Position numbers and translations under genes: made by a program. The notes below the pieces were generated by a model. It searched no databases, was not told where the DNA came from, and was given only the letters and a program-made list of their open reading frames with translations. 64,000 nucleotides of DNA from Dendrobates tinctorius (lineage: Eukaryota): contig NW_027361696.1 in NCBI RefSeq assembly GCF_039654945.1, forward strand, positions 89,652,001 through 89,716,000. The letters are read 5' to 3'. Position 1 is the first letter of the stretch. Every line of letters starts with the position of its first letter. This document shows positions 9,500 through 56,709 of this stretch, one piece after another.

Positions 9500-9756
9500 T
9501 AGAGTTGCTGAGAATCGATTTGCAAGGACCTGTTCCATAGGCCATGTCAGTAATCTGTGTCCTTATGGGCAAAAGCCTTTTTTGCCTAGTGGCCTTCATG
9601 GCTGTGCTTTGATTAGCCAATCTGGAGCACCAATTTGGTTATCCAAGAGGAGCTGCGATAGCGTCAGATAGGTGGTTCTCAAATGACCCACCAGCAACCA
9701 CAAATTATTAATGTGGCTGATGGACCGCGTTCTGCAAATCGATTTACAAAAACTCT
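9500..9756. mobile_element. MITE with TAGAG-type termini
   Basis: Imperfect TIRs TAGAGTTG...AATCGATTTGCA and TGCAAATCGATT...AACTCTA. Confidence 0.45.
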
Positions 9757-10879
9757 ACTTAATAATTTTATAAAGTAATAAATAATAACCTATGTAAACT
9801 GAACATAACATTCCAATAATAGTCAGATTTTTCTCTTAGTATAAGTCTGCAGGAAAATTAAGTTAAGAAGATAGAATATTTAAGAATCCCTTCAAAATGA
9901 ATATATAACTTAATTAAGCGTTTTAGTCTCATAAAAATGAAATATGACCTCTTGTAAACAGCTATAAATAATAAATGCGTGACGGATGCTTGGGAGGAAG
10001 GAAGCATGTGGCAGGCATTTTACCTTCCCTAGAGTAATGCTGCTCTTTAACCCAACACTCACTCAATATTCAAGTATATATGTCACATTTACTAAACGTG
10101 TGATGTGTGATGTTTGGGGGAAAACATAGTCATGCAAGATTAATGCTGACACAGATCCTTGATTTTAATGTGTAATCATCCTTCATGGCAGCAGGAATGC
10201 ACAGAACATCACCGAGCTAAACACGCAGGACCGCTTAATAAGAAGCGCCCAGCAGCCGCCTGTCAATAGACAAGCTTAAATGCTTCTCAGCACAGCAGAC
10301 AAGAAATACCTCATGTAATGCAACAGGATACACACTTCTTATACAAAACTGTGGAAATAAGAAGGTTATGTTGGATTAAGGGTATGCTTAGGGAGGTTTA
10401 AAGAAAGCTTAATCTACAGGGAAATTCACTAGCGTTGCACATATATGTTGAATCCGTTCTTTTCACGCATACAACACGTACCCATTAGAATCTATGGTGC
10501 TACTCACATGTCTGTGATTTTCATAGACTGTGTGTCCGTCCAAAATACATGGAGACGTGTCTAATTTTTTTATGGCAACATGGGTGTCAAGGGCCAATAT
10601 ATGTCTATGGGTCCATAAAAAAAACTTACTGCACATGGATGACATCAGTGTACCATCTGTGTGCTGTCCGTGCTTAACATTGCACAGCAGATGAGAAGCT
10701 CTGTAATTTATTTATTTTTCCATCCCTGAAAAATGCTGATGACACATTTGTGTTAAAACCGGACACACTGATGTCAAAAAAGGACACTCTGATGGTAAAA
10801 ACGGACACACATAGCCATTCACCCATTCACTCAACTACTAATCAGGATGGTAGCGTACAGTTTTAACAGCGTATCTTCA

Positions 10880-12350
10880 TGGTGTGAAATGATTCTTTGA
10901 CCCCACTATGAACACCAATATTTGCTTTGACATTTTGGAACAATTCCTGAATCAACTGGATGACCATGAGCTAATGGAAGGTTACTTCCAGCAATATGGA
11001 GAAAAGTGTCACGCATCATCAAGGAGCATAGTGGAAATGGAGTTCTTTTTTGGCAACAGAGTAATTTCAAAGCAGCTTTTGCCTTCAAGGTCGCCATATT
11101 TGACACTACCAGACTTCTTTTTGGATATGCTGAAAGGAAAAGTCTATTAGAATGAGCGTCTAGTTGTGGAAGAGTTTAAGGAAAACATCCAATGTGAAGT
11201 TGCTGCTATTCCCCCCCCCAGATGTTTGCCGATACGTTCAGGAACATGTGGGTCGCCCGCCAGGGCAGTGGGGTACTCGATACCGGGCCGGTATCTCAGA
11301 GGGAAGTGTCACAGTAGCGGTGACCCGGTCCGTGGCCCTGGGCGTCCATGTAAAAGGGGTTAAGAGTGGCTGGTTAAAGTTTATAAGTGGATGATACATG
11401 ACGCCACCTGTGGTGCTCGGCAATAAAGGGGTTAAGCCGACGCTGCAAACAGATCCACTGGGACAGATGGTGTGGTGCAGCAATGATGTTGTAGCCCTCC
11501 ACAGGTAGGGCTGCAGTCCCAGGGCAGAGTAGATGAAGAGGATAGATGTTGAGGAAGAGGTAGTAGTGTCTGGCACAGAGGTGTAGCAGTGCTGGAGAGT
11601 TTGCAGGAAGGAGGCAAGGACACAATAGGGTGTAGTTTCTTTTACCTTTACTTTTCTTGGTAAATGCAGTCCAGGGTCCAGATTACAGATGGAACAGAGG
11701 CTGGCCGGCCTGGAAGCAACTTAGGAATCTCTCTATCAGATGGGTTGTGTAGTCTCCTTTCTAGCGCTTATTTGAGGTACATGCAGTACTGTGTTACACT
11801 GAAGTTCCTCCTTCTTGTTCTCATTTAGAACTCCCTCATATGGCAGACAGCTGTAGCCTTCTTCTTCTTCTGGCTCACCCGTTGCTGTTGTGCCTCCGAG
11901 TCTTATATGGGAACAGAGCATTTACAGCTTCCTATTCCTCCGATTTCTGCTGCAGGAACATCAGTATCCATACAACCTTGGAGACCGGGCTCCAGATCAT
12001 GCGCTATAGCTAGAAGTGAGCACTCAACTCTGCTCAATCTTCAAGCTCCTCTCCTCCATGTCCACACACGTTGCCCTCCTCACACGAACTCCTAATTTTC
12101 CCTTCCTGGCCCCCAGAGAGTAGCTCTTCCTCTAATTTTGATTCAGAGTTCCCTCTGCTGGCCTGGAATGAGAACTGTGTTGTGTGTCATGATTAACTGA
12201 CAGAGAGACCCTTCATTGCTTCCAAGCATGACATCACACTCCCAAGGAGGAAGGTAATGCCACCATGGCGACCATACTCCTGGGGGCGCCACAAATGGAG
12301 AGCTACATCTAGCAGAAAATGGAGATCCCTTCCAGCATCGCATGTACTGC
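10880..12350 (+). pseudogene. Tc1/mariner (DDxD, rosa/maT-like) transposase relic split by a solo LTR
   Basis: YFQQYGEKCH and LLPSRSPYLTLPDFFLDMLKGKVY resemble the FQQDGAxxH and WPPRSPDLTPLDFFLWGYLK motifs. The reading resumes after the LTR as ELHLAENGDPFQH, the typical C-terminus. Confidence 0.7.
11249..12293 (-). mobile_element. Solo LTR of the same Gypsy family as 1-6923
   Basis: Reverse complement starts TGTGGCGCCCCCAGGAGTATGGTCGCCA and ends GGCGACCCA. Flanks CATG/AATG form an imperfect 4-bp TSD. Confidence 0.88.
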
Positions 12351-26136: not shown

Positions 26137-28430
26137 GCACCTAGCGATGGTGTCAAGGGGGAGATGTTGGGAGCCGATACACAATCACATTATTTAAAAG
26201 CCACTGTCAGCTATTGATTGATTGAACAGCAGTAATCATATATAACAATGGTCACTGCTGTTATAGGCTGAGCTCCTGAGCCCACAGGATTCATGTGCAA
26301 ACTGACAGTGATGCAACTGTTGTCAACATTTTAGTTTTTCTGGCCAGGTTATCAAAACATCAGGAGCAAACAATATTTTTAGGGACCCTTGGGAAAACCA
26401 TAATAAATTATTATGATTATCAGTCATATACAGTGGGGGAAATAAGTATTTGATCCCTTGCTGATTTTGTAAGTTTGCCCACTGACAAAGATATGAACAT
26501 TCTATAATTTTAAGGTTAGGTTAATGTTAACATTGAGAGACAGAATATCAAAAATAAAATTCAGATAAAAACATCATATAAATTTTAAAATTTATTTGCA
26601 TTTTGCAGTGGGAAATAAGTATTTGATCCCTCTGACAAACAAGACTTAATACTTGGTGGCAAAACCCTTGTTGGCAAGCACAACAGTCAGACATTTTTTG
26701 TAGTCGATGATGAGGTTTGTACACATGTCAGGAGGAATTTTGGTTCACTCCTCGGTGCAGATCATCTCTAAATCATTAAGATTTTTAGGCTGTCACTTGG
26801 CAACTCAGAGCTTCAATTCCGTCCATCAGTTTTCCATGGGACTAAGGTCTGGAGACTGGTTAGGCCACTCTATGTGCTTCTTTTTGAACCACTACTTTGT
26901 TGCCTTGGCTGTATGTTTTGGGTCATTGTCTTGCTGGAAGACCCAGCCATGACCCATTTTTAATGTCCTGGTGGAGGGAAGGAAGTTGTCACTCAGGATT
27001 GTACGGAACATGGCTCCATCCATTCTCCCATTGATGCAGTGAAGTAGTCCTGTAGCTTTAGCAGAGAAACACCCCCAAAAGATAATGTTTGACAGTGCGG
27101 ATGGTGTTCTTTGGGTCATAAGCAGCATTTATCTTCCTCCAAACACGGCGAGTTGAGTTAATGCCCAATACCTCAATTTTTGTCTCCAAAGAAAAAAGAC
27201 AGTCGACAGCACATCAGATAAACATAAGGATGCACGCTCCAAGTCCATAGACCCAATTGGACAAAATGACTCCAAATAGAAGAAGGGGAGGAACATAAAG
27301 ACCGATTTTGGTCAAAATGTTGTATTATGGAGGAATAAAGTTTCTTTTATTTTTTTCACCTGGATTGGATGCTGCTCCTCCCCTTTTCCTATTTGGAATA
27401 TTTTTGACAACAGCACCTTCTCCCAATCACTCACAGAATCATCCAGGTGTTCATTGGCAAACTTCAGATGGGCCTGCACATGTGCCTTCTTGAGTAAGGG
27501 GACTTTGAAGGCACTGCAGGATTTTAAACATTTATGGCGCAATGTGTTACCAATGGTTTTCTTGGTGACGGTGGTCCCAGCTGCCTTGAGATCATTAACA
27601 AGTTCACCCGTGTAGTTTTAGGCTGATCTCTCACATTCCTCATGATCAAGGATACCCCACAAAGTGAGATTTTGCATCGTGACCCAGACCAATGTCGATT
27701 GACAATCATTTTGTGTTTCCTTCATTTTCTTACTATTGCACCAACAGTTGTCGCCTTCTCACTAGTGTTGAGCATTCCGATACTGCAAATATCGGGTATC
27801 GGCCGATATTCGCTGTATCGGAATTCCAATACCAAGTACTGATATTTTTTCAATATCGGATACTGGAATCGGAAGTCCCCATAATGCAATGAGCCACTGT
27901 TGTGGCTGTGATTGGCTGCTGAAATGATGTCATCATGATGCGCGGTCTGTGCGCATCATGATGCGCGGTCTGTGCCGACAGCCGGGGGTCTGTACGGGCC
28001 TGCCGGGGGCCTGTGCCAGCTGCCGGGGGTCTGTACGGGCCTGCCGGGGGCTTGTGCCGGCTGCCGGGGGTCTGTACGGGCCTACCGGGGGGCCTGTGCT
28101 GGCTGCCGGGGTTCTGTACGGGCCTGTGCCGGCTGCCGGTGGTCTGTACGGGCGTACCGGGGGCCTGTGCCGGCTGCTGGGGGTCTGTACGGGCCTGCCG
28201 GGGGTCTGTGCCGGCTGCCGGGGGTCTGTATTGGCCTGCCGGGTGCCTGTGCCAGCTGCCGGGGGTCTGTGCGGGCCTGCCGGGGGTCTTGTGAGTGTGC
28301 AGGCATCGTCCGATGGGACTACAAGTATGTACTCTATGTTATATGTACTGTATGTCTATATGTATGTATTGTATGAATGTATTGCATGTGGTATGTATGT
28401 TGTATGTATGTAGTAAGTATGTAGTATGTA

Positions 28431-30038
28431 CAGTGGGGAAAAAAAGTATTTAGTCAGTCAGCAATAGTGCAAGTTCCACCACTTAAAAAGATGAGAGGCG
28501 TCTGTAATTTACATCACAGGTAGACCTCAACTATGGGAGACAAACTGAGAAAAAAAAATCCAGAAAATCACATTGTCTGTTTTTTTTTCATTTTATTTGC
28601 ATATTATGGTGGAAAATAAGTATTTGGTCAGAAACAAGCAAACAAGATTTCTGGCTCTCACAGACCTGTAACTTCTTCTTTAAGAGTCTCCTCTTTCCTC
28701 CACTCATTACCTGTAGTAATGGCACCTGTTTAAACTTGTTATCAGTATAAAAAGACACCTGTGCACACCCTCAAACAGTCTGACTCCAAACTCCACTATG
28801 GTGAAGACCAAAGAGCTGTCAAAGGACACCAGAAACAAAATTGTAGCCCTGCACCAGGCTGGGAAGACTGAATCTGCAATAGCCAACCAGCTTGGAGTGA
28901 AGAAATCAACTGTGGGAGCAATAATTAGAAAATGGAAGACATACAAGACCACTGATAATCTCCCTCGATCTGGTGCTCCACGCAAAATCCCACCCCGTGG
29001 GGTCAGAATGATCACAAGAACGGTGAGCAAAAATCCCAGAACCACGCGAGGGGACCTAGTGAATGAACTGCAGAGAGCTGGGACCAATGTAACAAGGCCT
29101 ACCATAAGTAACACACTACGCCACCATGGACTCAGATCCTGCAGTGCCAGACGTGTCCCACTGCTTAAGCCTGTACATGTCCGGGCCCGTCTGAAGTTTG
29201 CTAGAGAGCATTTGGATGATCCAGAGGAGTTTTGGGGAGAATGTCCTATGGTCTGATGAAACCAAACTGGAACTGTTTGGTAGAAACACAACTTGTCGTG
29301 TTTGGAGGAAAAAGAATACTGAGTTGCATCCATCAAACACCATACCTACTGTAAAGCATGGTGGTGGAAACATCATGCTTTGGGGCTGTTTCTCTGCAAA
29401 GGGGCCAGGACGACTGATCCGGGTACATGAAAGAATGAATGGGGCCATGTATCGTGAGATTTTGAGTGCAAACCTCCTTCCATCAGCAAGGGCATTGAAG
29501 ATGAAACGTGGCTGGGTCTTTCAACATGACAATGATCCAAAGCACACCGCCAGGGCAACGAAGGAGTGGCTTCGTAAGAAGCATTTCAAGGTCCTGGAGT
29601 GGCCTAGCCAGTCTCCAGATCTCAACCCTATAGAAAACCTTTGGAGGGAGTTGAAAGTCCGTGTTGCGAAGCGAAAAGCCAAAAACATCACTGCTCTAGA
29701 GGAGATCTGCATGGAGGAATGGGCCAACATACCAACAACAGTGTGTGGCAACCTTGTGAAGACTTACAGAAAACGTTTGACCTCTGTCATTGCCAACAAA
29801 GGATATATCACAAAGTATTGAGATGAAATTTTGTTTCTGACCAAATACTTATTTTCCACCATAATATGCAAATAAAATGAAAAAAAAAACAGACAATGTG
29901 ATTTTCTGGATTTTTTTTTCTCAGTTTGTCTCCCATAGTTGAGGTCTACCTATGATGTAAATTACAGACGCCTCTCATCTTTTTAAGTGGTGGAACTTGC
30001 ACTATTGCTGACTGACTAAATACTTTTTTTCCCCACTG
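28431..30038 (+). mobile_element. Full-length Tc1 (IR/DR type), copy A
   Basis: About 205-bp TIRs CAGTGGGGAAAAAAAGTATTTAGTCAG, TA flanks; near-identical to 45709-47313. Confidence 0.95.
28798..29821 (+). pseudogene. Tc1 DD34E transposase with a single +1 frameshift near 29235
   Basis: ORFs 28798-29256 and 29198-29821 together equal the 340-aa ORF at 46076. The extra G is in TTTTGGGGAGA versus TTTTGGGAGA. Confidence 0.92.
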
Positions 30039-30071
30039 TATGTTTCATAGAGGGTATCTCATTGTTCTAAT

Positions 30072-31778
30072 ATGTTTTCAATGCTAGTCCTCAATCCTGG
30101 CTTTGTTCTCAAATATCTGCGGGATGTAAAGTCTGATAACATCAGGGACAGTTTTGGTCAACAACCCCCAGAGCCCTTCCTCCCGACTTCCCAGCCCTCC
30201 ACCTTCAAAACCAACTTCTCCACCATTACAGAAGATCGACTCTCCACTCTACTCTCAAGATCACATCTCACCACCTGTGCACTCGACCCGATCCCATCCC
30301 ACTTCATCCCAAACCTCACCACAGTCTTCATCCCAACCCTAACCCATCTCTTCAACCTATCACTAACAACTGGTGTTTTCCCCTCAAGCTTTAAACATGC
30401 CTCCATCACACCTATCCTCAAAAAGCCCTCTCTTGACCCATCCTCTGTATCTAGCTATCGCCCTATATCACTTCTCCCATACGCCTCCAAGCTACTGGAA
30501 CAACACGTCTACCTTGAACTGTCCTCCCATCTCTCTTCTTGCTCCCTCTTCGACCGCTTACAATCTGGCTTCCGGTCACAGCACTCCACTGAAACTGCCC
30601 TTACTAAGGTCACCAATGACCTCTTAACTGCCAAGAGCAAGCGACACTACTCTGTCCTCCTCCTCCTGGACCTGTCGGCTGCCTTTGACACAGTGGACCA
30701 TTCCCTATTATTACAGACCCTCTCATCCCTCGGCATCACAGACTTGGCCCTCTCCTGGATCTCATCATACCTAACAGACCGGACATTCAGCGTCTCCCAC
30801 TCACACACCACCTCCTCACCTCGCCCCCTATCTGTCGGAGTCCCACAAGGTTCAGTCCTTGGGCCCCTGCTGTTCTCTATTTACACCTTTGGCCTGGGAC
30901 AGCTCATAGAATCTCATGGCTTTCAGTATCATCTTTATGCTGATGACACACAGATCTACATCTCTGGACTAGATATCACCTCCCTACTAACCAGAATCCC
31001 TCAATGTCTGTCCACTATTTCATCCTTCTTCTCCACTAGATATCTGAAACTCAACATGGACAAAACAGAATTCATCATCTTTCCCCCATCTCACGTGACC
31101 CCCCCTACGAACCTATCAATTACAGTAAATGACTGCCCACTCTCCCCAGTCCCAAAAGCTCGCTGCCTCGGAGTAATCCTTGACGCTGATCTCTCCTTCA
31201 AACCACATATCCAAACCCTTTCCACTTCATGCCGACTTCAACTCAAAAATATTTCACGCATCCGTTCATTCCTCACCCAAGAATCTGCAAAAACCCTAGT
31301 CCATGCCCTCATCATCTCTCGCCTTGACTACTGCAACCTCATGCTCTGTGGCCTCCCCTCAAACACTCTCGCACCCCTCCAATCTATTCTAAACTCTGCT
31401 GCCCGACTAATCCACCTGTCCCCCCGCTATTCCCCAGCTTCTCCCCTCTGTCAATCCCTTCACTGGCTCCCCATTGCCCAGAGACTCCATTACAAAACCC
31501 TAACCATGACATACAAAGCCATCCACAACTTGTCTCCTCCATACATCTGTGACCTCGTCTCCCGGTACTTTCCTGCACGCAACCTCCGATCCTCACAAGA
31601 TCTCCTTCTCTACTCCCCTCTTATCTCCTCTTCCCACAATCGCATACAAGATTTCTCTCGCGCATCACCCCTACTCTGGAACTCTCTACCACAACATATC
31701 AGACTCTCACCTACCATCGAAACCTTCAAAAAGAGCCTGAAGACCCACCTCTTCCGACAAGCCTATAACCTGCAGTAA
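30072..31778 (+). CDS. L2 ORF2 reverse transcriptase and C-terminal region, no endonuclease; first ~21 aa derive from flanking DNA
   Basis: [58 protein letters not shown]. Confidence 0.85.
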
Positions 31779-32006
31779 CCACCGATCGACCAAACCGCTG
31801 CACGACCAGCTCTGCCCTCGCCTACTGTATTATCACCCATCCCTTGAAGATTGTGAGCCCTCGCGGGCAGGGTCCTCTCTCCTCCTGTACCAGTTATGAC
31901 TTGTATTGTTTAAGATTATTGTACTTGTTTTTATGTATACCCCTCCTCACATGTAAAGCGCCATGGAATAAATGGCGCTATAACAATAAATAATAATAAT
32001 AATAAT
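30138..32006 (+). mobile_element. 5'-truncated L2-clade LINE
   Basis: RT ORF, 3' UTR stem-loop AGCGCCAT-GGAATAA-ATGGCGCT and (TAA)n tail. The empty insertion site is visible in reverse at 45601-45620. Confidence 0.93.
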
Positions 32007-32471
32007 GATCCTGGACACTGAACCCTTCTCTAACTCTTGTGCACAGCTCAGTTTCTGGATTTCTTCTTCTACAGCTTATGAGGAGTCTTTTCTCCCTTGC
32101 CCGCTTCTTACCCTGAAAATATCCCCATTATCTACACCCTATGTGATCTTCCCCACCTGAGAACTTGAATGGTTTCCCCCTCATGCTTCAACCTAATCTG
32201 CCATGTACAACCTCCTCTCCTGACCAGCCGCTATCTCTAACCTCTAACACAGAGAGAGTGGAGACAGTGAGCAGTGAGAGTCAGCACCAACAGAAGTGGC
32301 ATGTTGGCAGATTCATTGCAGAAGCAATAAATACTTTTTTGCCCCACTGTATGTATGTATGTATGTTGTATCAATGTAGTATATATGTATGTAGTATGTA
32401 TGTATATATGTTGAATGAATGTAGTATATATGTAGTATGTATGTATGTATGTTGTATGAATGTAGTATATA

Positions 32472-33982
32472 CAGTCATATGCAAAAGTTTGGGCACCCCT
32501 ATTAATGTTAACCTTTTTTCTTTCTAACAATTTTGGTTTTTGCAACAGCTATTTCAGTTTCATATATCTAATAACTGATGGACTCAGTTATATTTCTGGA
32601 TTCAAATGAGGTTTATTGTAGTAACAGAAAATGTGCAATCTGCATTTGATCAAAATTTGGCTAGTGCAAAAGTATCATTTTCTTGATTTGAATACTCCTA
32701 ACTACTTTTTACGGACTTCCTGAAGCACTAAATTGCTTTTGTAACCTCATTGAGCTTTGAACTTCATAGCCAGGTGTATCAAATCATGAGAAAAGGTATT
32801 TAAGGTGGCCACTTGCAAGTAGTTCTCCTTTTTGAATCTCCTATGAAGAGTGGCAACATGGGCTCCTCAAAACAACTCTCAAATGATCTGAAAACAAAGA
32901 TTATTCAACATAGCTTTTCAGGGGAAGGATACAAAAAGTTGTCTCAGAGATTTAACCTGTCAGTTTCCACTGTGAGGAACTGACAGGTTAAATCTCTGAG
33001 ACAACTTTTTGTATCCTTTCCCTGAAAAGCTATGTTGAATAATCTTTGTTTTCAGATCATTTGAGAGTTGTTTTGAGGAGCCCATGATGCCACTCTTCAT
33101 AGGAGAGTCAAATAGGAGAACAACTTGCAAGTGGCCACCTTAGGCTGGTTTCACATTAGCGCTTTTTAAGCGCACGCACGGCCGGGGGTGGCTCCGCCCC
33201 CGAGCCGGCTCTCTGCCCGGCGTTCCCGCCCCTTGCTTGTAGCGCCGCCTCCTAGCGCACAGCGGCGCCTGTGATCGGCGCACCCTATCTTTAGCATAGG
33301 GTGCGCAGATCGTGCACAGGCCGTGCGCTAGTTGCGCTTTGACTTGCGCTGCGCACTTTTGACGGTGCGCCGTGCGCGCCAAAATCCGAAAAGTTTGATT
33401 TTGGCGTGCACGGCGCACCGTCAAAAGTGCGCAGCGCAGGTCAAAGCGCAACTAGCGCACGGCCTGCGCACGATCTGCGCACCCTATGCTAAAGATAGGG
33501 TGCGCCGATCGCAGGCGCCGCTGTGCGCTAGGAGGCGGCGCTACAAGCAAGGGGCGGGCACGCCGGGCAGAGAGCCGGCTCGGGGGCGGAGTCACCCCGG
33601 CCGTGCGTGCGCTTAAAAAGCGCTAATGTGAAACTAGCCTTAAATACCTTTTCTCATGATTGGATACACCTGACTATGAAGTTCAATGCTCAATGAGGTT
33701 ACAAAACCAATTTAGTGCTTCAGGAAGTCAGTAAAAAGTAGTTAGGAGTGTTCAAATCAAGAAAATGATAAGGGTGCCCATACTTTTGCACCAGCCAAAT
33801 TTTGATTAAATTCAGATTGCCCATTTTCTGTTACTACAATAAACCTCATTTGAATCCAGAAATATTACTGCGTCCATCAGTTATTAGATATATGAAACTG
33901 AAATAGCTGTTGCAAAAACCAAAATTGTTAGAAAGAAAAAGGTTAACATTAATAGGGGTGCCCAAACTTTTGCATATGCCTG
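32472..33982. mobile_element. Fold-back Tc1 derivative made of two left ends joined head-to-head
   Basis: TA-flanked ends CAGTCATATGCAAAAGTTTGGGCACCC / GGGTGCCCAAACTTTTGCATATGCCTG. Each arm carries the transposase start MGSSKQLSNDLKTKII (ATG at 32858). Turn-around at about 32968-32980. Confidence 0.88.
33143..33639. mobile_element. 497-bp GC-rich palindromic Harbinger MITE, copy 1
   Basis: TTA TSD; TIRs GGCTGGTTTCACA / TGTGAAACTAGCC; nearly perfect hairpin over its whole length; sister copy at 55876-56372. Confidence 0.92.
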
Positions 33983-43108: not shown

Positions 43109-45286
43109 TATATACATTTTTTTTTTTTTTTCAAAGGACAGAGTAGAGAACACAGGGTTCCTTTAATGATGTCCCTGAAGTGTTTTCTGATTTTTATATG
43201 CAATAATGCACTATTCTTATACAATGCAGAATCCAAGGTTTCCGTGACCCCAGAGCTGCTGTCATTTTTCCTGCAGGAGAAATAGCTCTGTTCACGCTGG
43301 CTTCCCATCTATAATTCTATAAGTCGCTGCTAGATGGCTAACACAAGTGTCTGCTGTAAGTAAGAAGTGATTGAATGCTGCACTGCAGCACGGGTCCCTC
43401 TAGCGCTGTATCACAGAAATATGAGTACACAACTTGGTGCCTCTGCTTGAATTGGAGTCTCTGCCAGTTTGGGTTTGATACTGTAAGAACCATTGCTTCG
43501 TTTTTGTAAAATGCCATTCAGTAATCAGGGGTCAGTGTAAAAGCTTGTGTTTTAGCTCCAGCTGAAGATAACAAAATCTTTTATATCGGCAAAATGTAAC
43601 CCACAAGGACAACACTATTAGAGATTTTTACTACCTATACACACTGTATTGTATTTCTTTTAGTTTATTGATAGAGAGTAAACTAAAATTAAGGAAAATA
43701 CAATCCAATTGGTGAAAAGGTACAATACTTGATTGTATCCAACCAGCCAAACAAAAGTTTGAAGACACATGAATTTCTTTTTTATCTTTATTGAAATGTA
43801 CACATTGCAAATTCAGACTAAAGGCGGCAAAACCAAGAAACAATGGGTAAAAAATTACGTGTGAAACAAACTAGAAGTGTGGTAAACCTTAGATTCCTCA
43901 ATGTTGTGGTCCTTCTGCAGTTTTATATATCTTTTAAACAAAAATAATATCACATACTGAGCCCCTGATTTCCTATATGTCATGTAACACTTGCTCCACA
44001 ACAAAGTAGATCTGATGACTTTGGTATTGTCTATCAGTCCAGTGTAATGCCTGTATTCCCTGCTTCATAACCTTCACGACAACCTCCCATTGAAACAATG
44101 CCCCAATTAGGACATGATACAGTTTGGATAATTTGGCCACAGCAGTCTTTAGATAATTAAATTCAAAACATTCAATAATGCGTAAGATTGGTAAGGTCCT
44201 TGAATCTGTCAAAATCTGGTGATAACCAAAAAACGTAACCATAAACAATAACAATTCCCAGCCATTACCCCACTGGCTCGGGAACACCACAACCCCAAAA
44301 AGGGATCCTCTCTAATCCAAACTTCTGAGGATCGGACATTAGATTGTTGCTAGTCCCCCCAAAAAACATAAAATCAAAGACAAACTTTTGCCAATTGTGG
44401 AATCCATGTCCTAATCAATTAATCAGACTAATTTAGAACCAAGTTCAAGGACCCATCCAACTGCTACAAACCACCATGACCCAAGAGTTGCACTCATGTA
44501 ACCCCATTCCTATACATCTTGCAAAATTAAGAGAGGACGGACGTGACTGCGAACTTCGCTGGGATCTGGATAATGTAAAACCTCATCCCCTTTTTCTGCA
44601 TTTATAACTCCTTTCTCCCAGCCTCTTACTGCCCACTTAATAACAATAACTCCACCTTCCCTCCAACCCATCATCATGCTGGCCTCCGCTCATGCTATTG
44701 CGGCTGCTCCAGCCTTTCCTTACAGAAAAAGTTATAGGCATTGAATACCTTTGAAAAAAAATGCTAAATTAAAGCAAACCTGTTATTACATTCACTTCTT
44801 GAAACACTGGCAGCATGAATCAAAGCCTGACTGCACTATTGTATAAAGGTATACATTTCTTTGAAAAGTCCCCATTGGGACTCACAATCTAAATTCTCTA
44901 CCAGTATGTCTTTAGAGTTATATTATAGGGGGATGACTAATCTTTCACCCCACTTCAGTTGATTGACAACTCTCTCTCATGTGTGTAGTTAGGAAAATCA
45001 ACTGAAGCGGTGCAAAGAGAAGCTGACCGGGAACTGCACCAGACAAGTTAGGTCCCTTCTTATAGTTCCCGTCTCTTCAAACTAAATTTTCAATGACAAG
45101 CTGCACTGTTTCAGGAACACGTGCCTGGCTTCATTCATGCAGCAGGGTTTTGATTCATCCCAGTGGTTCAGACACAGTGAATCTAGTGACAGGTTCCCTT
45201 TAAAGAACTTTCCATATTAATTAAAATGTCCTAACATTTTACTGCTGTAGATCCAGTATAACGTCTTTACGTAGATGGAAGTCCTG

Positions 45287-45708
45287 TTGCTTCTGCAATG
45301 AATCTGCCAACATGCCACTTCTGTTGGTGCTGACTCTCACTGCTCACTGTCTCCACTCTCTCTGTGTTAGAGGTTAGAGATAGCGGCTGGTCAGGAGAGG
45401 AGGTTGTACATGGCAGATTAGGTTGAAGCATGAGGGGGAAACCATTCAAGTTCTCAGGCGGGGAAGATCACATAGGGTGTAGAAAATGGGGATATTTTCA
45501 GGGTAAGAAGCGGGCAAGGGAGAAAAGACTCCTCATAAGCTGTAGAAGAAGAAATTCAGAAACTGAGCTGTGCACAAGAGAGTTAGAGAAGGGTTCAGTG
45601 TCCAGGATCATCAGACTTTACATCCCGCAGATATTTGAGAACAAAGCCAGGATTGAGGACTAGCATTGAAAACATATTAGAACAATGAGATACCCTCTAT
45701 GAAACATA
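45287..45708. repeat. About 420-bp segment duplicated in inverted orientation at 30039-30137 plus 32007-32327
   Basis: Near-identical reverse complement; both copies give the same ORF prefix MNGFPLMLQPNLPC. Confidence 0.95.
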
Positions 45709-47313
45709 CAGTGGGGCAAAAAAGTATTTAGTCAGTCAGCAATAGTGCAAGTTCCACCACTTAAAAAGATGAGAGGCGTCTGTAATTTACATCATAGGTA
45801 GACCTCAACTATGGGAGACAAACTGAGAAAAAAAAATCCAGAAAATCACATTGTCTGTTTTTTTTTCATTTTATTTGCATATTATGGTGGAAAATAAGTA
45901 TTTGGTCAGAAACAAGCAATCAAGATTTCTGGCTCTCACAGACCTGTAACTTCTTCTTTAAGAGTCTCCTCTTTCCTCCACTCATTACCTGTAGTAATGG
46001 CACCTGTTTAAACTTGTTATCAGTATAAAAAGACACCTGTGCACACCCTCAAACAGTCTGACTCCAAACTCCACTATGGTGAAGACCAAAGAGCTGTCAA
46101 AGGACACCAGAAACAAAATTGTAGCCCTGCACCAGGCTGGGAAGACTGAATCTGCAATAGCCAACCAGCTTGGAGTGAAGAAATCAACTGTGGAAGCAAT
46201 AATTAGAAAATGGAAGACATACAAGACCACTGATAATTTCCCTCGATCTGGTGCTCCACGCAAAATCCCACCCCGTGGGGTCAGAATGATCACAAGAACG
46301 GTGAGCAAAAATCCCAGAACCACGCGGGGGGACCTAGTGAATGAACTGCAGAGAGCTGGGACCAATGTAACAAGGCCTACCATAAGTAACACACTACGCC
46401 ACCATGGACTCAGATCCTGCAGTGCCAGACGTGTCCCACTGCTTAAGCCTGTACATGTCCGGGCCCGTCTGAAGTTTGCTAGAGAGCATTTGGATGATCC
46501 AGAGGAGTTTTGGGAGAATGTCCTATGGTCTGATGAAACCAAACTGGAACTGTTTGGTAGAAACACAACTTGTCGTGTTTGGAGGAAAAAGAATACTGAG
46601 TTGCATCCATCAAACACCATACCTACTGTAAAGCATGGTGGTGGAAACATCATGCTTTGGGGCTGTTTCTCTGCAAAGGGGCCAGGACGACTGATCTGGG
46701 TACATGAAAGAATGAATGGGGCCATGTATCGTGAGATTTTGAGTGCAGACCTCCTTCCATCAGCAAGGGCATTGAAGATGAAACGTGGCTGGGTATTTCA
46801 ACATGACAATGATCCAAAGCACACCGCCAGGGCAACGAAGGAGTGGCTTCGTAAGAAGCATTTCAAGGTCCTGGAGTGGCCTAGCCAGTCTCCAGATCTC
46901 AACCCTATAGAAAACCTTTGGAGGGAGTTGAAAGTCCGTGTTGCCAAGCGAAAAGCCAAAAACATCACTGCTCTAGAGGAGATCTGCATGGAGGAATGGG
47001 CCAACATACCAACAACAGTGTGTGGCAACCTTGTGAAGACTTACAGAAAACGTTTGACCTCTGTCATTGCCAACAAAGGATATATCACAAAGTATTGAGA
47101 TGAAATTTTGTTTCTGACCAAATACTTATTTTCCACCATAATATGCAAATAAAATGAAAAAAAAACAGACAATGTGATTTTCTGGATTTTTTTTCTCAGT
47201 TTGTCTCCCATAGTTGAGGTCTACCTATGATGTAAAGTACAGACGCCTCTCATCTTTTTAAGTGGTGGAACTTGCACTATTGCTGACTGACTAAATACTT
47301 TTTTTCCCCACTG
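45709..47313 (+). mobile_element. Full-length Tc1 (IR/DR type), copy B, intact
   Basis: TA TSDs; about 205-bp TIRs with an inner direct repeat AAGTATTTGGTCAG. Confidence 0.96.
46076..47098 (+). CDS. Tc1 transposase, 340 aa, DD34E
   Basis: Paired-like HTH, RSGAPRK, WSDE, WGCF, and QHDND...PDLNPIE with 34 residues between the second D and E. Confidence 0.95.
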
Positions 47314-55400: not shown

Positions 55401-55875
55401 AATGTGTTGTCAGACTCGGAAGAGAAAAAATAGTGCCTGAGCAGGTAAATGTGTTGTGTTATTGATCTCCATGTGCTGCGAGGGTGATATAATGCTTGAT
55501 CTGTGGTTAGCGATTACAGATCACACAATACATGAAGAGAAGCCAGGCTTGTATTTCACGAAAGCCAATGAGCAAACCATTAAAATAAACAAAGACGTGA
55601 AAAGCATAAACACACACGTAAAATATGCCAATAAAATCATCATGTGATCCTTGTTTTGTCCAAACGCATCTGATATTTTCCCATAAGCCTTTACTGTAAT
55701 GTGTAGACCATATTTGCACACTATGGATTTTACCGACATCCATAAGCCAAAAACTCGGATTTCTGCTACAGATTGACTAGTGGATTTGAACACGTATTAA
55801 TATACAAGACCTCACATTGCTGGTATATTTGCATTCTGTCAGGAGTCAGGCATTGATTGTGTGAACACAGCCTTA

Positions 55876-56372
55876 GGCCGGTTTCACACTAGCGCATTTT
55901 CAGCGCGCGCACGGCCGGGGTAGCTCCGCCCCCGATCCGGCTCTCTGCCCGGCGTGCCCGCCCCTTCCTTGTAGCGCCGCCTCCTAGCGGACAGCGGCGC
56001 CTGCGATCGGCGCACCCTATCTTTAGCATAGGGTGCGCCGATCGTGCGCAGGCCGTGCGCTAGTTGCGCTTTGACCTGCGCTGCGCACTTTTGACGGTGC
56101 GCCGTGCGCGCCAAAATCCGAAAAGTTTGATTTTGGCGCGCACGGCGCACCGTCAAAAGTGCGCAGCGCAGGTCAAAACGCAACTAGCGCACGGCCTGCG
56201 CACGATCGGCGCACCCTATGCTAAAGATAGGGTGCGCCGATCGCAGGCGCCGCTGTCCGCTAGGAGGCGGCGCTACAAGGAAGGGGCGGGCACGCCGGGC
56301 AGAGAGCCGGCTCGGGGGCGGAGCTACCCCCGGCCGTGCGCGCGTTGAAAATGCGCTAGTGTGAAACCGGCC
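55876..56372. mobile_element. 497-bp GC-rich palindromic Harbinger MITE, copy 2
   Basis: TTA TSD; TIRs GGCCGGTTTCACACTAGCGC / GCGCTAGTGTGAAACCGGCC. Confidence 0.92.
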
Positions 56373-56709
56373 TTAGTTTGACAGCACCACAGTCTTACAG
56401 ATCCCATATACAGACAATATATGAATAAAATGGAGAAAACTGGTAAATACATTACATTATTGATCTTGCAATGATTCTGGCTGCATTATAAGTAATGAAG
56501 CCAAGATACATCTGAGGGCATTATTTGTCTTGACTTGGCTGCGGCACTGACGTCAGCATAGATGGCAATGTCATGTGCTGTGTATGACACCAAGGACGTC
56601 AATAAAAATTGGTCGAAGGCATTGGCACTATGACAATGGCTTATTATTTAAAGGTCAGTATTTCAGTATTTGTTATACTGACATATTAGGAAGATGGAGC
56701 CTGACTTAA

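What the first reader, a model, noticed from the sequence alone, without database searches (positions are those of the whole stretch)
28431..32349. Composite Tc1 that has captured ~420 bp of its neighbour's flank and gained a third terminus
Seen: copy A is followed by TA, then the reverse complement of the DNA abutting copy B 13 kb away (45287-45708), then an extra ~21-bp TIR tip (AATACTTTTTTGCCCCACTG) and TA, after which the host microsatellite resumes. The extra tip carries the CAGTGGGGC variant found only at copy B's left end. The flank adjoins the left TIR in B but the right TIR in A. Inference: local hopping or alternative transposition (or templated gap repair) moved flanking DNA, giving Pack-type transduction by a vertebrate Tc1 with donor and product both visible.
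Basis: partly seen in the sequence, partly recalled or inferred. Interest (0 to 1): 0.7.

Follow-up and report, generated by a model that had tools for sequence, protein, structure and literature searches.

The report
Tc1 end patched with neighbour's flank
In a poison-frog-like genome, a break at the right end of one Tc1 jumping gene was most likely mended by copying 420 bases of flank from a second Tc1 copy 15 kb away; this is a clean single example of a known repair accident, not a new way of moving host DNA.

Summary
Copy A (28431-30038) is followed by TA, then by the reverse complement of the 420 bases abutting copy B's left end (45287-45706). A 22-base terminal-repeat tip (32328-32349), a TA and the same (GTAT)n microsatellite follow.

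- The segment is low-copy: contig depth is about 5, against 1e5-1e6 for Tc1 and the LINE. It has no Pfam or Rfam match.
- The Tc1 body is inverted relative to the segment in A versus B. Flank and transposon were therefore not copied or moved together. The join between A's own DNA and B-derived DNA lies within or at the tip of the 208-base terminal repeat.
- Best model (about 0.68): a break at A's right terminus, invasion of B's mirror-image left repeat in cis, read-out into B's flank, then end joining.
- The tip cuts the outer transposase-binding repeat and lacks the inner one, so it is probably dead.
- The C variant is the family's ancestral state, so it is weak as a marker.

This fits single-copy Pack-TIR formation by gap filling (Tan et al. 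2021). The scan had already found other Tc1 repair accidents in this genome (s1-389122, s1-377011). Junction-spanning reads were not obtained.

The parts
28325..28430 (.). Left part of the host (GTAT)n microsatellite; its last two bases (28429-30) are the TA beside copy A's left end
   Evidence: Tandem Repeats Finder; sequence
28431..30038 (+). Tc1 copy A, 1,608 bases. Terminal repeats are about 208 bases (28431-28637 and 29831-30038). The transposase frame is broken by one extra G at 29234. Both termini carry A at repeat position 9.
   Evidence: Pfam domains shown on the intact copy B
30039..30137 (-). TA plus the first 97 bases of the captured segment, the reverse complement of 45610-45708; 100% identical to the donor
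30138..32004 (+). Later insertion: a 5'-truncated non-LTR retrotransposon with a reverse-transcriptase ORF and an (AAT)n tail. A 2-base AT duplication sits at 30136-37 and 32005-06. It is absent from the donor copy, which serves as its empty site.
   Evidence: Pfam RVT_1 at E=1.2e-36; alignment; contig depth 1e5-1e6
32005..32327 (-). Remainder of the captured segment, the reverse complement of 45287-45611; 98.5% identical (3 substitutions and one 2-base indel); low copy
   Evidence: Depth is 4.9 (X1) and 4.5 (X6) in bin 32008-32174, and contig record 8 has 0 mismatches
32328..32349 (-). 22-base terminal-repeat stump (positions 22 to 1, C at position 9), joined to the segment without microhomology. 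It cuts the outer binding repeat.
32350..32471 (.). TA (32350-51) and the continuation of the same (GTAT)n microsatellite
   Evidence: sequence
45287..45706 (+). Donor segment X: 420 bases of anonymous low-copy DNA left of copy B, followed by TA at 45707-08
   Evidence: No Pfam or Rfam match. No match in 107 kb of Ranitomeya imitator
45709..47313 (+). Tc1 copy B, 1,605 bases, with an intact 340-residue transposase ORF at 46076-47098. The left terminus has C at position 9 and the right terminus has A. Its left repeat is the inferred repair template.

Best explanation
Copy A was already sitting in the microsatellite, and copy B was already sitting next to segment X, 15.6 kb to the right, with its left end facing copy A's right end.

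Inferred sequence of events:

1. A double-strand break, or a stalled and disengaged replication end, arose at or within about 22 bases of copy A's right terminus.
2. The element-side 3' end paired with copy B's left terminal repeat. That repeat is a near-perfect mirror image of A's right repeat over about 208 bases.
3. The end was extended outward, past B's tip, through the TA, and 420 bases into B's flank.
4. The flank-side end carried 22 bases of terminal repeat. Most simply these were copied from B's left tip, which has C at position 9. Priming would have been on the 8 bases (ACATACAG) that the two junctions share.
5. The two ends were joined without microhomology.

The product is a full Tc1, a TA, the inverted neighbour flank, a dead 22-base stump, and the original TA and microsatellite. 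A 5'-truncated LINE landed in the captured piece later.

Shown directly: the anatomy, the inverted orientation, the low copy number, the donor's empty LINE site, and the exact match of the predicted junctions.

Inferred: the initiating lesion, the order of strand invasions, and the source of the stump.
For: 1. A product predicted from 'A's own element + reverse complement of B's TA and flank + reverse complement of B's first 22 bases + A's flank' differs from the observed sequence (LINE removed) at only four later mutations, all inside the segment. All three junctions match exactly.
2. The Tc1 body aligns to a 'copied together with B' prediction only in reverse orientation. The switch between A-derived and B-derived DNA must therefore lie inside or at the tip of the symmetric repeat, where homology-guided invasion would place it.
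3. The inner terminus keeps A's own state (A at position 9), while the stump has B's left-end state (C). This model needs no extra mutation.
4. The segment is low-copy and A's version is single-copy. The donor lies about 13 kb away in cis. That matches the cis bias under 15 kb reported for single-copy Pack-TIRs made by transposition-independent gap filling, western clawed frog included (PMC8277862).
5. Both flanks are one microsatellite with TA on each side, as expected if copy A's original insertion site was kept.
6. Template switching from one terminal repeat to the inverted one during gap repair is already proposed for a Tc1/mariner element (PMC3814204).
7. Two other Tc1 repair accidents were noted in this genome (s1-389122 and s1-377011).
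Against: - No read or contig was shown to span the Tc1/segment junction or the segment/stump junction. All runs were contigs, and none of the few contig pieces listed bridged them.
- The flank-side priming rests on only 8 shared bases. Five of them (TA plus CAG) are present at every Tc1 end, so the match is compatible but not significant.
- C at position 9 is the ancestral family state. The stump could therefore be A's own old end, in which case one extra change at the inner terminus is needed.
- IR/DR-type elements are reported to suppress single-ended cleavage (PMC5224488). A transposase cut at one end only is thus not the obvious initiator, and a fork stall at the microsatellite or a random break is equally possible.
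- No 'copy A alone' allele or orthologue was seen.
Confidence: 0.68

Rival explanations
1. Pack-type transduction by transposition. A composite of stump, flank and Tc1 formed at or near copy B's locus. It was then cut out by transposase, using the stump and a full end, and pasted as one unit into a TA in the microsatellite.
For: The whole 3.9-kb block is bounded by Tc1-type termini in the right mutual orientation and by TA on both sides, inside one continuous microsatellite. An intact transposase gene sits nearby in copy B. Multicopy Pack-TIRs that moved by transposition exist in frogs (PMC8277862).
Against: - The Tc1 body is inverted relative to the segment compared with the donor locus. The inner terminus also lacks B's C variant. 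Extra steps (a flip or re-insertion, plus a mutation) are therefore needed.
- The stump has only 22 bases. It cuts the outer binding repeat and lacks the inner one. IR/DR elements mobilise such truncated ends poorly (PMC5224488).
- A's version of the segment is single-copy by depth.
- The present B locus shows no stump left of X.
Confidence: 0.12
2. Transposase-catalysed aberrant (one-ended or alternative) transposition. The cleaved 3' end of copy A's right terminus attacked the TA beside copy B's left end. The branched intermediate was resolved by copying and end joining.
For: The A-right/TA/segment junction lies exactly at the natural cleavage and strand-transfer position and uses a TA. Short-range hops are typical of Tc1-type elements (established knowledge). 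Imprecise or asymmetric cleavage has been reported for Sleeping Beauty (bioRxiv 10.1101/659086).
Against: - The other two breakpoints are not at a terminus or a TA target: repeat position 22/23 and the left edge of X, where no TA is present.
- Nothing but repeat homology explains why, of all the TAs in 15 kb, the one touching B's terminus was hit.
- IR/DR architecture is reported to suppress single-ended reactions (PMC5224488).
- The product is the same as for the repair model, so this differs only in the first chemical step.
Confidence: 0.1
3. Independent Tc1 insertions into the same TA of a repeated sequence X.
For: Tc1 always inserts at TA, and the two Tc1 copies lie in opposite orientation relative to X, as independent hits might.
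Against: - X is low-copy: depth about 5, against 1e5-1e6 for true repeats in the same stretch. It has no match in 107 kb of a related frog.
- This reading leaves unexplained why A's copy of X ends in a Tc1 stump and sits inside a microsatellite bounded by TA.
Confidence: 0.03
4. Assembly artefact: a false join through the 208-base inverted repeats, or mixing of haplotypes.
For: The region is packed with very high-copy repeats, and no junction-spanning read was seen.
Against: - A false join through the repeat would run on into B's left flank, not into a 22-base stump, a TA and the resumed microsatellite.
- A's copy of the segment has four private differences and a private LINE insertion. It is recovered with 0 mismatches in an independent contig set (record 8).
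- No further A/B homology exists.
Confidence: 0.04

Closest known systems
Single-copy Pack-TIRs made by transposition-independent gap filling (Tan et al. 2021, Nat Commun, PMC8277862)
   Same: Host DNA sits between the termini of a TIR transposon. It is single-copy, the parental copy lies in cis within about 15 kb, and the original TSD is kept. Frogs are among the richest animal genomes for such cases.
   Different: - The template switch went through the terminal repeat of a second copy of the same transposon. The filler is therefore that copy's flank, entered exactly at its terminus, and a whole extra terminus is retained.
- The break lies at or near the very end of the element, whereas their breakpoints are skewed toward the interior.
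- One junction has no microhomology.
- The captured DNA has no recognisable gene content.
Abortive gap repair with template switching between inverted terminal repeats (model for the Goblin MITE from the Tc1/mariner element Ozma, PMC3814204; Rubin and Levy 1997 for Ds, as cited there)
   Same: A newly made strand ending in one terminal repeat invades the inverted repeat and is extended. The released ends are then end-joined.
   Different: There the switch is within one element and yields a miniature derivative. Here it goes to a different copy 15.6 kb away and runs out into host DNA, leaving the full-length element in place.
Ectopic repair between dispersed Tc1 copies in C. elegans (Fischer, Wienholds and Plasterk 2003, Genetics 164:127; seen only as a reference in PMC13148408, content from my own knowledge)
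   Same: Broken Tc1 sites use other Tc1 copies in the genome as repair templates.
   Different: That work describes sequence exchange inside the elements. Here synthesis overshot the template element's end and copied its flank.
3' transduction by LINE-1, and multicopy Pack-MULE / Pack-TIR families
   Same: Flanking or host DNA ends up carried next to a mobile element.
   Different: Those cases arise from, or are followed by, real mobilisation and give multiple copies with different target-site duplications. This case is single-copy, and its extra end is probably non-functional.
FoSTeS / MMBIR replicative template switching
   Same: A short inverted duplication is copied from a nearby template after a fork stall. 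The adjoining microsatellite is a plausible stall site.
   Different: Entry here is guided by about 208 bases of repeat homology, not by microhomology. Whether the lesion was replicative or a break cannot be told from the sequence.

Membership tests
IR/DR-type Tc1 element (Tc1/mariner superfamily) | TA target-site duplication and terminal inverted repeats starting CAGT | tested here: met
   TA lies on both sides of copies A and B. The repeats are about 208 bases and 98.5-99% identical.
IR/DR-type Tc1 element (Tc1/mariner superfamily) | Transposase with paired-like HTH domains and a DDE domain | tested here: met
   Copy B's ORF of 340 residues matches HTH_SB, HTH_Tnp_Tc3_2 and DDE_3 above the curated cut-offs. 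Copy A is frameshifted.
IR/DR-type Tc1 element (Tc1/mariner superfamily) | Two direct-repeat binding motifs in each terminal repeat | tested here: met
   The outer core is at positions 14-27 and the inner core at 188-201. Binding itself was not tested.
Pack-TIR, single-copy gap-filling class (Tan et al. 2021) | Non-transposon host sequence lying between the termini of a TIR element, with a parental copy elsewhere | tested here: met
   The segment at 30041-32327 lies between copy A's left end and the stump. The parent is at 45287-45706. It is low-copy.
Pack-TIR, single-copy gap-filling class (Tan et al. 2021) | Single copy, with the parental copy close by in cis | tested here: met
   Depth is about 5 for A's version. 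The donor is about 13 kb away in the same window.
Pack-TIR, single-copy gap-filling class (Tan et al. 2021) | The transposon without the filler exists at the orthologous site of outgroups (capture came after insertion) | not testable with these tools
   No whole-genome search of relatives is available, and the single read-laying run gave only contigs.
Pack-TIR, single-copy gap-filling class (Tan et al. 2021) | Microhomology at breakpoints | tested here: inconclusive
   One side has about 208 bases of full repeat homology. The segment/stump junction has none. The 8-base match at the flank-side priming site is largely forced.
Transposition-dependent transduction (multicopy Pack-TIR or composite transposon) | Several copies with different target-site duplications | tested here: not met
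   A's version of the segment has single-copy depth, and no second composite exists in the window. The whole genome was not searched.
Transposition-dependent transduction (multicopy Pack-TIR or composite transposon) | Two complete, transposase-competent termini | tested here: not met
   The stump holds 22 bases, cuts the outer repeat core and lacks the inner one. Function was not assayed.
Transposition-dependent transduction (multicopy Pack-TIR or composite transposon) | Product colinear with the donor arrangement | tested here: not met
   The Tc1 body is inverted relative to the segment.
Alternative transposition (reversed-ends or sister-chromatid type, as for Ac/Ds) | All rearrangement breakpoints lie at element termini and at a new target site with its own duplication | tested here: not met
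   Only one of the three junctions is at a terminus. The others are at repeat position 22/23 and at a non-TA site at 45286/45287.

The most novel reading that the evidence does not exclude
The block is, or once was, a mobilisable Tc1 carrying its neighbour's flank. More broadly, ends of very abundant Tc1 copies may routinely prime read-through out of paralogous copies into their flanks. That would be a homology-guided 'flank transduction' route that seeds short dispersed duplications in giant, transposon-rich frog genomes. The three Tc1 repair oddities now noted in this one genome hint that such events are not rare there.
Probability: 0.12. Interest if true: 0.55.

Novelty: new member of a known kind. 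Interest (0 to 1): 0.3.

Why it matters
This is an unusually legible natural record of how a cut-and-paste transposon picks up host DNA. Several things survive together in one 64-kb window:

- the donor;
- the product;
- the entry point, which is a paralogous terminal repeat;
- the synthesis tract, 420 bases long;
- the end-joined exit;
- a later LINE insertion that gives relative timing.

It supports the view that single-copy captures in animals are repair by-products and not transposition products. It also shows a specific variant in which the template is the flank of another copy of the same element. It does not reveal a new mechanism or a new mobile unit, and the captured DNA has no recognisable function.

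Tried and rejected
- **Common-repeat reading rejected.** Segment X is not a common repeat independently hit at the same TA. Depth is about 5, against 1e5-1e6 for real repeats. It has no copies in 107 kb of a related frog and no other copy in the window.
- **Larger duplication rejected.** There is no homology between the loci beyond Tc1 and X, so this is not a haplotypic or segmental duplication.
- **Co-copy models rejected.** Models in which X and the Tc1 were copied together from B predict the wrong orientation of the Tc1 body.
- **Other break and template models not favoured.** These are a break at repeat position 22/23, a 22-base staggered cut, and repair off the sister chromatid. With today's letters at repeat position 9, each needs at least one extra change there, so they are kept only as sub-variants.
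- **Simple inversion rejected.** An inversion between A's right repeat and B's left repeat, or mixing with an inverted haplotype, predicts B's left flank after the segment, not a stump plus microsatellite.
- **LINE-type insertion with a 22-base target duplication rejected.** There is no poly-A at either end of the insert, and it would not explain why the insert starts at the TA next to B's terminus.
- **Family sampling in this species failed.** Exact-protein look-ups with B's transposase and with A's N-terminal ORF found nothing. The frequency of C versus A at repeat position 9 in this genome therefore stays unknown.
- **Read-level confirmation not obtained.** All four runs were contig sets.
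- **Gene content of X: none found.** Pfam and Rfam gave no match.
- **Literature.** Fischer et al. 2003 is not held in the library.
Full report
**What is there**

The window holds two copies of one Tc1 family.

- Copy A is 28431-30038 and copy B is 45709-47313. Both lie on the + strand and are 99.13% identical, with 14 differences.
- Each has terminal inverted repeats of about 208 bases and TA on both sides.
- Copy B keeps an intact 340-residue transposase ORF (46076-47098) with HTH_SB, HTH_Tnp_Tc3_2 and DDE_3 domains.
- Copy A has one extra G at 29234 that breaks the frame.
- The closest database proteins are 97% identical and come from Ranitomeya imitator. Catfish and salmonid copies are 85-89% identical.
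- This fits an earlier scan note that this is a frog genome. It also fits the report of very abundant, fish-related Tc1 elements in a poison frog (PMC6278860).

**Check of the observation**

The 420 bases plus TA left of copy B (45287-45708) recur in reverse complement directly after copy A's right terminus.

- The two pieces are 30039-30137 (100% identity) and 32005-32327 (98.5%: 3 substitutions and one 2-base indel).
- Between the two pieces A carries a 1,867-base, 5'-truncated non-LTR retrotransposon (30138-32004). It has a reverse-transcriptase ORF (RVT_1, E=1.2e-36) and an (AAT)n tail.
- Copy B's locus is the empty site for this LINE, so the LINE arrived after the duplication.
- After the segment comes a 22-base stump (32328-32349) equal to repeat positions 22 to 1. 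Then come TA and the same (GTAT)n array that precedes copy A.
- The segment/stump junction has no microhomology.
- Nothing else links the two loci.

**Is the segment a repeat, and is it an artefact?**

Contigs of four public runs were laid on 28000-33000.

- The bin 32008-32174 has depth 4.9 in the best holder and 4.5 in a second species. Tc1 and the LINE reach 1e5 to 1e6.
- One contig (record 8) matches 32018-32327 with no mismatch. It therefore carries all four sites at which A's version differs from B's.
- A's version is thus a real, single-copy sequence.
- X has no match in 107 kb of R. imitator and no Pfam or Rfam match.
- No listed contig bridged the Tc1/segment or segment/stump junctions. 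Read-level proof of those two joins is still missing.
- A false join through the repeats would have continued into B's left flank, not into a stump and the resumed microsatellite.

**The decisive anatomical point**

Relative to the segment, the Tc1 body is inverted. X touches the left repeat (the 5' side of the transposase gene) in B, but the right repeat in A.

- A prediction in which stump, X and copy B are copied or moved together aligns to the observed Tc1 only in reverse.
- X and its Tc1 neighbour therefore did not travel together.
- The change from A's own DNA to B-derived DNA must lie inside or at the tip of the symmetric repeat.

**Best model**

A break, or a disengaged replication end, arose at or within about 22 bases of A's right terminus.

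- The element-side 3' end paired with B's left repeat, its mirror image 15.6 kb away and facing it.
- That end was extended past B's tip, through the TA, and 420 bases into B's flank.
- The flank-side end carried 22 bases of repeat.
- The ends were then joined bluntly.

A sequence built from 'A + reverse complement of B's TA and flank + reverse complement of B's first 22 bases + A's flank' equals the observed one, once the LINE is removed. The only exceptions are the four later changes inside the segment.

With the letters as they stand, this version needs no extra mutation. The inner terminus keeps A's own A at position 9, and the stump has B's C. The flank-side end and B's junction share 8 bases (ACATACAG). 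Five of these are present at every Tc1 end, so this is compatible but not significant.

Variants remain possible. In these, the stump is A's own old end, from a break at position 22/23 or a staggered cut. Each costs one extra change at position 9.

**What the C variant is worth**

C at position 9 is found at 6 of 6 termini in R. imitator and in a catfish relative. It is the ancestral state, and A is the derived one. Sharing C is therefore weak evidence of descent from B's left end. Its frequency in this genome could not be measured.

**Is the third terminus functional?**

The repeats have an IR/DR layout, with the outer core at positions 14-27 and the inner core at 188-201.

- The stump ends at position 22, so it cuts the outer core and lacks the inner one.
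- For Sleeping Beauty-type elements this layout enforces synapsis before cleavage, and it suppresses both single-ended reactions and the mobilisation of internally deleted copies (PMC5224488).
- The stump is therefore probably dead. Together with the single-copy state and the inverted body, this argues against Pack-type transduction by transposition.
- The same paper also argues against a transposase cut at one end only as the initiating lesion. A fork stall at the adjoining microsatellite or a random break is as likely. Imprecise cleavage has nonetheless been reported for Sleeping Beauty (bioRxiv 10.1101/659086).

**Comparison with what is known**

- Tan et al. 2021 (PMC8277862) found 370 Pack-TIRs in 100 animal genomes, 25 of them in the western clawed frog.
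- They concluded that single-copy ones arise by transposition-independent gap filling, with a strong cis bias: 57% lie within 15 kb of the parent.
- This case meets their definition and their cis bias.
- It differs in that the template was reached through a second copy of the same transposon. The filler is that copy's flank, and a full extra terminus is retained.
- Switching from one terminal repeat to the inverted one during gap repair was proposed for a mosquito Tc1/mariner element (PMC3814204).
- Use of dispersed Tc1 copies as repair templates is known from C. elegans (Fischer et al. 2003, seen only as a reference; content from my own knowledge).
- The scan had already logged two other Tc1 repair accidents in this genome: s1-389122, a spliced-mRNA patch at a broken end, and s1-377011, a fold-back of two left halves.

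**Timing**

- X and its copy differ by four events in 420 bases.
- The two Tc1 copies differ by 0.87%.
- At three A/B differences the family majority has B's letter, so those are private to A.
- The inferred order is: both Tc1 insertions first, then the capture, then the LINE insertion.

**Verdict**

This is a clear new example of a known kind of event and is of modest interest.

Noticed in passing
window 46076-47098: Copy B has an uninterrupted 340-residue Tc1 transposase ORF with all three expected domains and near-perfect 208-base repeats, so it is a candidate autonomous element. Its protein is 97% identical to Ranitomeya imitator copies and 85-89% identical to catfish and salmonid copies. 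This is in line with the fish-frog horizontal transfer proposed for poison frogs.
   Followed up: partly
window 29234: The extra G that frameshifts copy A may not be private. In the laid contigs only 19-49% of summed depth lacks this base in four runs of three species. Many family copies might therefore share the frameshift. However, depth from contigs is not a copy number, and the site lies in a G run.
   Followed up: no
window 30138-32004: A young, 5'-truncated non-LTR retrotransposon with an open reverse-transcriptase frame up to its stop and an (AAT)n tail. Its family is as abundant as the Tc1 (depth 1e5-1e6) in all three frog species laid.
   Followed up: partly
window 26591-27090: A fragment of a different, older Tc1-like element on the minus strand, 71% identical to positions 938-1446 of copy A.
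   Followed up: no
window 33138-33642 and 55871-56375: A 500-base sequence that matches its partner in both orientations (93-94% identity), so it is a palindromic or fold-back repeat present twice in the window.
   Followed up: no
   Followed up: no
L001, L002 and L007, each about 9632-11242: The three Ranitomeya imitator gene models that brought in these loci are fusions of host exons with a full Tc1 of this family (about 98% identical to copy B in L001 and L002). These 'proteins' are annotation artefacts of transposon ORFs inside genes.
   Followed up: partly
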